A DNA stretch of 63,751 bases, counting the filler, from Sluysia triapertura (taxonomy: Eukaryota), in the NCBI GenBank assembly GCA_046118255.1. It is 5 parts of 5 records of this genome, joined end to end, with 100 filler letters (N's around TTAATTAATTAA, not from the genome) between each part and the next. Parts side by side here need not be neighbours in the genome. Positions count along the whole stretch, not along the records: positions 36,854 to 48,792 come from JBJNIA010154603.1; 4 more parts are not named here. One strand, written 5' to 3'. Under the pieces are notes generated by a model. It had not been told where the DNA came from. It ran no database searches and saw only the letters and a program-made list of their open reading frames with translations. Shown here in pieces: positions 44,482 through 45,003 of the stretch. A program made the translations under genes and the position numbers. The stretch's first letter is position 1; each line of letters begins with the position of its first letter.

Positions 44482-45003
44482 TGTTGGAGTAAAGGCCTAA
44501 GATGCCATGTAGAATTATGATAATAATACTGAATATAATAAAATAAAATTGTTAGACGGGGCTGATAGTTCAGTAGGATTCTCCTACACCAATTATCGGT
44601 GACTCTCGATGACCTGACATACAGGTCCGCGGTACTTCCTCATCGCAACTGTTCTTGATTGATGTCAAAAGTGAAGAAAAATTTCGAAATAGCCCGAACC
44701 ACCAATATTGCGAAGTATTCTGATCTACAGGGCAAACTACAGGAAGCTGTCCCTGGATACATTCGTCGTTGGAGCTTTGGGCTCATGGGATCCCGAGAAT
44801 GACAAGCTTCTCAAGGCACCTGGCTTCCACAAGACCAAAATCAAGACTCTGTTACGACAGTGTGTACGAATAACGCATATCGCTACCATGCCCTACAGGT
44901 CCCTGAATAGAAGAAAGAAGATTACCTTCCTTCTCTAAAAAAAGAAGCTCAATGAGAGGTCCCGGGTTCACTTCCCGGTCTGTCCATTTTGTGAGGTCTA
45001 ACA
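44482..45003 (+). mobile_element. tRNA-containing LTR-like element split by a LINE insertion
   Basis: TGTTGG at 44482 and CTAACA ending at 45003, TSD CTAT (44478-44481 / 45004-45007). 5' half ends GGGGCTGATAGTTCAGT at 44574; 3' half resumes at ~44947. Confidence 0.85.
44575..44946 (+). mobile_element. 5'-truncated RLE-type non-LTR retrotransposon (same family as ~32270-35404)
   Basis: Aligns to 35034-35365 from AGGATT onwards. Encodes PDIQ...LIDVK and VVGALGSWDPENDKLL (restriction-like endonuclease C-terminus). Ends TTCTCTAAAAAAAGAA. Confidence 0.9.

What the first reader, a model, noticed from the sequence alone, without database searches (positions are those of the whole stretch)
44482..45003. 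RLE-type LINE inserted into the tRNA-like cassette of an LTR-like element: candidate site-specific retrotransposon targeting another mobile element
Seen: a complete host element (TGTTGG...CTAACA, TSD CTAT) is split right after the A-box/D-loop sequence GGGGCTGATAGTTCAGT (44574) by a ~370-bp 5'-truncated LINE encoding the RLE C-terminus. The tRNA 3' half with its B box resumes at ~44947. The same LINE family abuts the same tRNA 3' half at 35405, so both LINE copies in the window sit in the same host sequence and orientation. Known: RLE LINEs are often sequence-specific (R2 in 28S rDNA, NeSL in SL RNA genes, Utopia in U2 genes). Inference: this family cuts in the tRNA D-arm region (between AGCTCAGT and CATCGAACT) and uses these abundant tRNA-mimic elements, and possibly real tRNA genes, as safe-harbour targets or Pol III promoter donors.
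Basis: partly seen in the sequence, partly recalled or inferred. Interest (0 to 1): 0.9.

Follow-up and report, generated by a model that had tools for sequence, protein, structure and literature searches.

The report
Dead LINE inside tRNA-derived repeat
A broken tail of a jumping gene (an RLE-type LINE whose nearest detectable relatives are Utopia elements that target U2 snRNA genes) sits inside the tRNA-like part of a very abundant short repeat. Several other places in the same genome show the same arrangement, so this LINE family probably aims at that repeat, a variation on a known theme and not a new kind of system.

Summary
A 522-bp unit at 44482-45003 (TGTTGG...CTAACA, flanked by CTAT/CTAT) contains the last ~110 codons of an RLE LINE ORF. 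The ORF is frameshifted and ends in A7. It splits a tRNA-derived module into a 5' part (44558-44574) and a 3' part (T arm, TTTT; 44944-44990).

Contigs of the one public run that holds this locus show three things:
- The host repeat is extremely abundant.
- Uninterrupted host copies join 44568-44575 to 44953-44956 through 8-33 nt, for example CGTAGAGCATCGAACTGCGCACCGT.
- At least six other single-copy-depth contigs join the same host 5' part, in the same orientation, to LINE positions 44650-44897. These are different 5' truncations.

Four of four relatives with genomic flanks sit directly upstream of U2 snRNA genes, so they are Utopia-type (NeSL clade). tRNA-gene-specific relatives are already published.

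Site-preferential insertion is therefore supported but not quantified. 3' junctions and the share of copies in other flanks could not be tabulated. The "LTR-like" nature of the host and any use of genuine tRNA genes remain untested.

Verdict: partly supported; new variant of a known kind; moderate interest.

The parts
44478..44481 (.). CTAT, left copy of the 4-bp direct repeat flanking the host unit (candidate target-site duplication)
   Evidence: Read; repeated at 45004-45007; chance about 0.009 at fixed borders.
44482..44557 (+). 5' region of the host repeat (TGTTGGAG..., AT-rich middle, TGTTAGAC at 44550-44557)
   Evidence: Summed contig depth rises from about 25-360 to 8,500 and then 105,000 across 44485-44538. 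Loose-end consensus of other copies (AAAGGCCTAAAATGCCATATAG...) matches 44491-44512. TGTTAGAC is the inverted complement of GTCTAACA at 44996-45003.
44558..44574 (+). 5' part of the tRNA-derived module: acceptor strand plus start of the D arm, A-box-like TAGTTCAGT
   Evidence: Bin 44539-44565 has summed depth 915,094 against about 12-40 in unique flanks. In more than 500 contigs the sequence runs on as GGTTAGAGCATCGAACTGCACAGC... after 44568-44574.
44575..44943 (+). 5'-truncated, frameshifted 3' end of an RLE LINE: RLE domain in three frame pieces (44613-44720, 44659-44799, 44693-44935), stop TAA 44936-44938, A7 tail 44937-44943
   Evidence: Translations; alignment A1; tblastn; phmmer; about 15,000-50,000 summed depth, so a repeated family. 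The 5' junction lies somewhere in 44574-44585.
44944..44986 (+). 3' part of the tRNA-derived module: degenerate anticodon-arm remnant, variable loop AGGTC, T arm CCGGG-TTCACTT-CCCGG (44962-44978, B-box-like GGTTCACTTCC), acceptor strand TCTGTCC, A
   Evidence: Truncated Rfam tRNA hit to model positions 25-71, 13.2 bits, E=1.7. Other contigs join it to the 5' part.
44987..45003 (+). TTTT (Pol III terminator-like) and the host 3' terminus GTGAGGTCTAACA
   Evidence: Depth falls from about 12,000 to 412 and then about 50 beyond 44998.
45004..45007 (.). CTAT, right copy of the flanking direct repeat

Best explanation
A short, very abundant repeat landed here first. It is about 150-170 bp when intact, with a 5' region of about 75 bp, a tRNA-derived module, TTTT, and termini TGTTG...TAACA. 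In this copy it is flanked by CTAT.

Later an RLE-type LINE of the R2/NeSL group inserted into it by target-primed reverse transcription. It entered in the same orientation as the tRNA-like module, between the D loop (...TTCAGT/GG) and the anticodon-arm region. It was 5'-truncated to the last ~110 codons plus a short A tail, and about 10-25 nt of target were lost or scrambled. The copy is old and dead: it has at least two frameshifts and in-frame stops.

The LINE family does this repeatedly. Its endonuclease or DNA-binding part prefers this tRNA-like sequence, as related LINEs prefer U2 or tRNA genes, so a high-copy repeat serves as its landing pad.

Shown: the nesting, the RLE identity, the abundance of both repeats, several independent host/LINE joints, and the kinship to U2-targeting LINEs.
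Inferred: the cleavage specificity, the order of events, and TPRT.
For: - Anatomy by reading and translations.
- The RLE motifs tile full-length LINE proteins (A1; P0006 E=1e-10).
- P0006 has RVT_1, and its best solved relatives are R2 proteins, E=5e-62, including the RLE part.
- One search gives summed depth 915,094 on 44539-44565 and about 15,000-50,000 on the LINE, against about 12-40 on unique flanks.
- One search shows more than 500 contigs leaving the window copy at 44568-44574 into GGTTAGAGCATCGAACTGCACAGC.
- One search shows joints from 44564-44575 to 44953-44956 with 8-33 nt between. These are uninterrupted hosts.
- One search shows host-to-LINE joints 44573>44650, 44553>44724, 44563>44744 (+17 nt), 44574>44753, 44566>44754 (+5 nt) and 44568>44897 (+CTAAGTGGATACA, that is host D loop up to AGTGG). 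Each has depth 14-46 (single locus) and all are collinear.
- Relatives P0012, P0014, P0015 and P0017 lie directly upstream of U2 snRNA genes in L003, L004, L002 and L005. This is the published Utopia pattern.
- The same paper reports tRNA-Pro, tRNA-Arg and tRNA-Glu specific relatives and states that most RLE LINEs are target-specific (PMC4640811).
Against: - Only a truncated list of joints and loose ends was returned (26 joints, 6 'letters between' rows and 322 loose ends were hidden). The share of LINE copies in other flanks is therefore unknown.
- For three of the six host/LINE joints the tool says the letters between are 'not known', so those junction positions are not exact.
- A rough null does not exclude chance. 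With about 1,500 LINE copies and the host making up about 1-2% of the genome, random insertion alone would give some 15-40 nested copies.
- The host 3' half has far lower summed depth (about 12,000) than the 5' half (915,094), which is not explained.
- The clade assignment rests on about 110 broken codons of the RLE domain. No RT is present.
- The window copy's flanks are not U2.
Confidence: 0.6

Rival explanations
1. Chance nesting. A LINE without sequence specificity happened to land in a repeat that is simply very common. The other host/LINE joints are further chance hits or alignment artefacts among short repeat contigs.
For: The host is enormously abundant and the LINE has on the order of 10^3 copies, so some nested copies are expected. 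Joints were called at 80% likeness with sides of 21-38 nt, and for three of them the letters between are unknown.
Against: All six displayed host/LINE joints end in the same 22-nt stretch of the host (44553-44574), five of them within 12 nt. All are in the same orientation as the window copy, and no strand-changing joint was among those shown. Two carry extra host letters that stop at AGTG(G), the same D-loop point. Relatives are site-specific.
Confidence: 0.2
2. Composite unit. Either the host/LINE chimera arose once and was then amplified (with later internal deletions), or the LINE family carries the tRNA-like 3' half as its own 3' end (read-through or captured target). The association would then be inherited and not re-created at each insertion.
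For: The summed depth of this 3'-half variant (about 11,000-12,000) is close to that of the LINE 3' end (about 13,000-22,000) and far below the host 5' half. The ORF stop runs straight into A7, leaving almost no 3' UTR before the tRNA-like part. The whole unit has intact termini and one flanking CTAT pair.
Against: Different LINE truncation points are joined to the same host point, which fits independent 5'-truncated insertions better than deletions that all end at the junction. The window copy's own 31-mers across 44917-45150 and 44350-44558 are single-copy (contigs of depth 11.9 and 16, 0 mismatches), so there has been no recent amplification of this chimera.
Confidence: 0.12
3. The real targets are genuine tRNA genes (as for LIN15_SM, LIN25_SM and NeSL-1_TV). 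The tRNA-derived repeat is hit only because it still resembles them.
For: Published precedent in the same LINE group (PMC4640811). The host module keeps a tRNA-type D arm, T arm and acceptor pairing.
Against: Nothing here shows a genuine tRNA gene interrupted. The piece holds no tRNA gene. With 10^4-10^5 repeat copies, the repeat would dominate as target in any case.
Confidence: 0.08

Closest known systems
Utopia (NeSL clade; U2 snRNA gene-targeting RLE LINEs; Kojima & Jurka 2015, PMC4640811)
   Same: The window's RLE fragment finds its best matches among proteins whose genomic copies lie directly upstream of U2 genes (P0012, P0014, P0015, P0017). It shares the C-terminal zinc finger plus PD..D/ExK endonuclease layout, a small Pol III/snRNA-type target, and 5' truncation with variable 5' junctions.
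   Different: The flanks here are a tRNA-derived repeat and not U2 (no U2 hit in the piece). RT is absent, so clade membership cannot be tested. The target is a dispersed repeat of 10^4-10^5 copies and not a low-copy gene family.
tRNA-gene-specific NeSL-related LINEs: LIN15_SM (tRNA-Arg), LIN25_SM (tRNA-Glu) of planaria, NeSL-1_TV (tRNA-Pro)
   Same: The LINE 3' end is followed, in sense orientation, by the anticodon-arm/T-arm portion of a tRNA sequence (supplement file 5 of PMC4640811). The RLE LINE group is the same.
   Different: Those sit in genuine tRNA genes and end in ...TTTTTAA and not in a short A run. Here the target is a degenerate tRNA-derived module embedded in a mobile repeat. 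No sequence comparison with those families was possible.
R2 (28S rDNA-specific RLE LINE)
   Same: The endonuclease type and the mechanism (TPRT) are the same. The insertion style also matches: a precise 3' junction, 5' truncations, small target deletions. P0006, the best full-length relative, matches solved R2 proteins at E=5e-62.
   Different: The target is different. Sequence kinship is closer to Utopia-type proteins than to R2.
LINEs that target other transposons (Tx1L in Tx1D of Xenopus; recalled from memory, and 'transposons' are listed as LINE targets in PMC4640811)
   Same: One mobile element uses another repeated element as its landing site.
   Different: Tx1 elements carry an APE-type endonuclease. 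This is a resemblance by concept only and was not tested here.

Membership tests
RLE-type LINE (R2/NeSL/R4/CRE/HERO group) | C-terminal PD..D/ExK restriction-like endonuclease domain | tested here: met
   RPDI...LIDVK...AR...KYSDL and FVVGALGSWDP tile the RLE domain of full-length LINE proteins. The solved R2 proteins matched by P0006 cover the same domain. The copy itself is frameshifted.
RLE-type LINE (R2/NeSL/R4/CRE/HERO group) | Reverse transcriptase upstream of the RLE in one ORF | tested here: not met
   The copy is 5'-truncated and no RT-like sequence occurs anywhere in the piece (tblastn). RT is present only in relatives (P0006 RVT_1).
Utopia / NeSL clade | Placement in the clade by RT phylogeny | not testable with these tools
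   There is no RT in the window, and no full-length copy of this genome's family could be fetched.
Utopia / NeSL clade | Flanked by U2 snRNA gene sequence at the conserved site | tested here: not met
   No U2 hit at E<=1 in the piece. Relatives L002-L005 are flanked by U2.
Site-specific LINE | Independent copies with different 5' truncations joined to the same target position and orientation | tested here: inconclusive
   Six further host/LINE joints were found (to 44650, 44724, 44744, 44753, 44754 and 44897), with the host part ending at 44553-44574, all collinear and each at single-locus depth. The list is truncated, and three junctions have unknown letters in between.
Site-specific LINE | Precise common 3' junction, and most copies in the target | not testable with these tools
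   The single read-laying run did not list loose ends at the LINE 3' end, and there was no other access to this genome.
tRNA gene | Cloverleaf that passes tRNA detectors | tested here: not met
   ARAGORN found 0 in the piece and 0 in four intact host variants rebuilt letters. The Rfam tRNA hit is only 13.2 bits against a gathering score of 29, on the 3' half. The acceptor, D and T arms are recognisable by eye; the anticodon arm is degenerate.
LTR / solo LTR | TG...CA termini with a 4-6 bp target-site duplication | tested here: met
   TGTTGG...CTAACA with CTAT/CTAT, seen in this one copy only.
LTR / solo LTR | Occurs as paired repeats around an internal region with PBS/PPT | tested here: inconclusive
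   There is no second copy or internal region in the 11.9-kb piece. Genome-wide pairing could not be examined. An alternative border exists: the inverted repeat TGTTAGAC (44550-44557) / GTCTAACA (44996-45003).
tRNA-derived SINE | tRNA-like head at the 5' end, body, and a LINE-like or A-rich 3' tail | tested here: not met
   The tRNA-like module lies at the 3' end of the repeat, followed only by TTTT plus 13 nt. About 75 nt of non-tRNA sequence precede it.

The most novel reading that the evidence does not exclude
A LINE lineage akin to the U2-targeting Utopia elements has switched its target to the tRNA-like module of a 10^4-10^5-copy mobile repeat. By using another transposon as a safe harbour it has reached on the order of 10^3 copies, far more than snRNA-gene or tRNA-gene specialists can. 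The repeat's own tRNA-like Pol III unit might also drive co-transcription of the inserted LINE.
Probability: 0.4. Interest if true: 0.55.

Novelty: new variant of a known kind. Interest (0 to 1): 0.42.

Why it matters
If confirmed, this would add a dispersed, high-copy, tRNA-derived repeat to the list of RLE-LINE targets (rDNA, spliced-leader, U2, tRNA genes, microsatellites). It would show how a site-specific LINE can escape the copy-number ceiling set by a small gene family. It would also provide a natural RLE/target pair with a short, defined recognition sequence for cleavage studies. It would not change the general picture, because target-specific RLE LINEs, including tRNA-gene specialists, are already described.

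Tried and rejected
- Pfam gave nothing for the three ORF pieces.
- The search for homologous proteins with the 81-aa piece found nothing because of its length limits.
- Exact-pattern scans found nothing: LINE and host patterns in metagenome contigs, and the host pattern in genome contigs. No second copy from this genome could be fetched.
- The EML-exon ORF is not on record. It is an AT-rich animal genome; the run's contigs total about 736 Mb.
- L001, L006 and L007 are element-only contigs without flanks.
- ARAGORN on 1,050 artificial joins of the two halves gave occasional 'tRNA' calls that used LINE tail letters as the anticodon. I rejected these as a multiple-testing artefact.
- A U6/L1-style template-switch chimera was considered and rejected. 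The host's upstream region and its 3' half both flank the LINE, which needs insertion into a pre-existing host copy.
- A U2-like identity of the flanks was rejected.

Full report
**What is in the sequence**

The piece is AT-rich eukaryotic DNA with about 24% G+C. At 44482 the sequence TGTTGG begins and at 45003 CTAACA ends. CTAT stands immediately before (44478-44481) and after (45004-45007). At fixed borders a 4-nt match has a chance of about 0.009 in this composition.

Inside the unit, GGGGCTGATAGTTCAGT (44558-44574) looks like the acceptor strand and D arm of a tRNA. The stretch 44944-44986 holds AGGTC, a T arm CCGGG-TTCACTT-CCCGG and TCTGTCC-A, followed by TTTT.

No detector calls a tRNA gene. 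ARAGORN finds 0 and Rfam finds nothing at E<=1 in the piece. Only a truncated tRNA hit of 13.2 bits (E=1.7 in an 81-nt search) covers the 3' half.

**The insert is the tail of an RLE LINE**

Between the two halves, three reading-frame pieces encode the RLE domain:
- 44613-44720: PDIQV...LIDVKS
- 44659-44799: FEIARTTNIAKYSDLQGKL
- 44693-44935: FVVGALGSWDPENDKLLKAPG...

The stop TAA at 44936-44938 runs into seven A's.

The three pieces tile, in order, the conserved RPD..D.T..K.EKY..VVGALGSWDP block of full-length LINE proteins (alignment A1; tblastn, P0006 E=1e-10). The exhaustive phmmer search gave only ten hits. The best full-length one, P0006 (1544 aa), has an RVT_1 domain. It matches solved R2 proteins at E=5e-62, including their endonuclease part.

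The copy is therefore a 5'-truncated LINE remnant. It is dead, with at least two frameshifts and in-frame stops.

**What the rest of the genome says**

One public run holds this locus. Its contigs were laid on 44350-45150 at 80% likeness (the only such call allowed).

Summed depth by region:

| Region | Summed contig depth |
|---|---|
| Unique flanks | about 12-60 |
| 44539-44565 (host 5' tRNA-like part) | 915,094 |
| 44512-44538 | about 105,000 |
| LINE part | 15,000-50,000 |
| Host 3' half | about 12,000 |
| Beyond 44998 | 412, then about 50 |

The host is therefore a very abundant repeat and the LINE a repeated family.

More than 500 contigs leave the window copy at 44568-44574 and run on as GGTTAGAGCATCGAACTGCACAGC.... 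Several contigs join 44564-44575 to 44953-44956 with 8-33 nt in between, for example CGTAGAGCATCGAACTGCGCACCGT. These are uninterrupted host copies and show that the two halves are one tRNA-derived module. It has a good acceptor, D arm and T arm and a degenerate anticodon arm. ARAGORN still finds no tRNA in four rebuilt intact variants.

**Is the association recurrent?**

The same output lists six contigs, each at single-locus depth (14-46), in which the host 5' part is joined collinearly to a later LINE position:
- 44573>44650
- 44553>44724
- 44563>44744 (+17 nt)
- 44574>44753
- 44566>44754 (+5 nt)
- 44568>44897 (+CTAAGTGGATACA)

In the last, the extra letters are the host D loop up to AGTGG, the same point as in the window copy.

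Different truncation points at one host position and one orientation are the signature of independent TPRT events at a preferred site. They argue against a single chimera that was later amplified.

The limits of this evidence are real:
- The tool hid 26 joints, 6 'letters between' rows and 322 loose ends.
- Three of the six joints have unknown letters in between.
- I could not see the 3' junctions of other copies or count LINE copies in unrelated flanks.
- A rough null gives 15-40 chance nestings (about 1,500 LINE copies, host about 1-2% of the genome). The clustering and orientation carry the argument, not the count. This estimate is my inference from summed k-mer depths.

**Kinship**

A search with the C-terminus of P0006 found P0012 (Athalia rosae), P0014 (Stegodyphus dumicola), P0015 and P0017 (Metopolophium dirhodum). 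All four genomic loci (L003, L004, L002, L005) carry a U2 snRNA gene directly after the LINE ORF. This is the published Utopia pattern (PMC4640811).

The same paper states that most RLE LINEs are target-specific. It reports tRNA-Pro, tRNA-Arg and tRNA-Glu specific relatives (NeSL-1_TV, LIN15_SM, LIN25_SM). Its supplement shows LINE 3' ends followed by the sense 3' portion of the tRNA, as here.

The window's flanks are not U2. Clade membership cannot be tested because the RT is missing.

**The host**

'LTR-like' rests on TG...CA termini plus a 4-bp duplication in this one copy. No second copy or internal region lies in the piece.

The tRNA-like module sits at the 3' end of the repeat, which does not fit a classical SINE. 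An 8-bp inverted repeat, TGTTAGAC (44550-44557) / GTCTAACA (44996-45003), offers another possible border. The much higher depth from 44539 onward would fit that border. The class of the host is unresolved.

**Verdict**

The site-specific reading is the best explanation (about 0.6) but is not quantified. Use of genuine tRNA genes and promoter donation are untested. Given published tRNA-gene and U2 specialists in the same LINE group, this is a new variant of a known kind and of moderate interest.

No same-genome copies could be fetched. The organism remains unidentified.

Noticed in passing
window 37049-39830, minus strand: Exons of an EML (echinoderm microtubule-associated protein-like) gene. 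A HELP-domain exon lies at 37783-38280 ([20 protein letters not shown]...), and WD-repeat exons lie at about 37060-37200 and about 39660-39830. The end of one beta-propeller unit lies upstream of a new HELP domain, which suggests an EML5/6-type tandem architecture. The LINE/host unit at 44.5 kb may lie in an intron or upstream of this gene, on the opposite strand.
   Followed up: partly
window 39990-40205, plus strand: C-terminal remnant of a Tc1/mariner-type transposase (WKIVKRKLSTHKPSTRAELIETLIKVWRNDEVIKE*SPKLIRGMPLRIRKLLDNEEEQTKY) with an in-frame stop. It was seen by translation only.
   Followed up: no
window 36854-37048: An (AGTAGTAAT)n microsatellite runs into an assembly gap of N (36913-37048). 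Several long (ATT)n/(AAT)n tracts occur at 39590-39640, 42810-42870 and 47710-47750.
   Followed up: no
L002 (ENA contig ctg156597), 1-10409: A tandem array with a period of about 7.5 kb in which each unit holds a full-length Utopia-type LINE (1802-1825 aa, Myb plus RVT) and a U2 snRNA gene. This means successive U2 repeat units are each occupied.
   Followed up: partly
P0001 (Macrochelys suwanniensis) and P0002-P0004: Annotated 'proteins' that contain 3-14 tandem repeats of the LINE RLE C-terminal block. They are probably gene models run through arrays of truncated LINE tails.
   Followed up: no
window 44944-44997 versus 44539-44565: The 3' half of the host module has about 75-fold lower summed contig depth than its 5' half (about 12,000 against 915,094). 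Either this copy's 3' half is a diverged or rare variant, or the abundant family shares only the 5' part.
   Followed up: no
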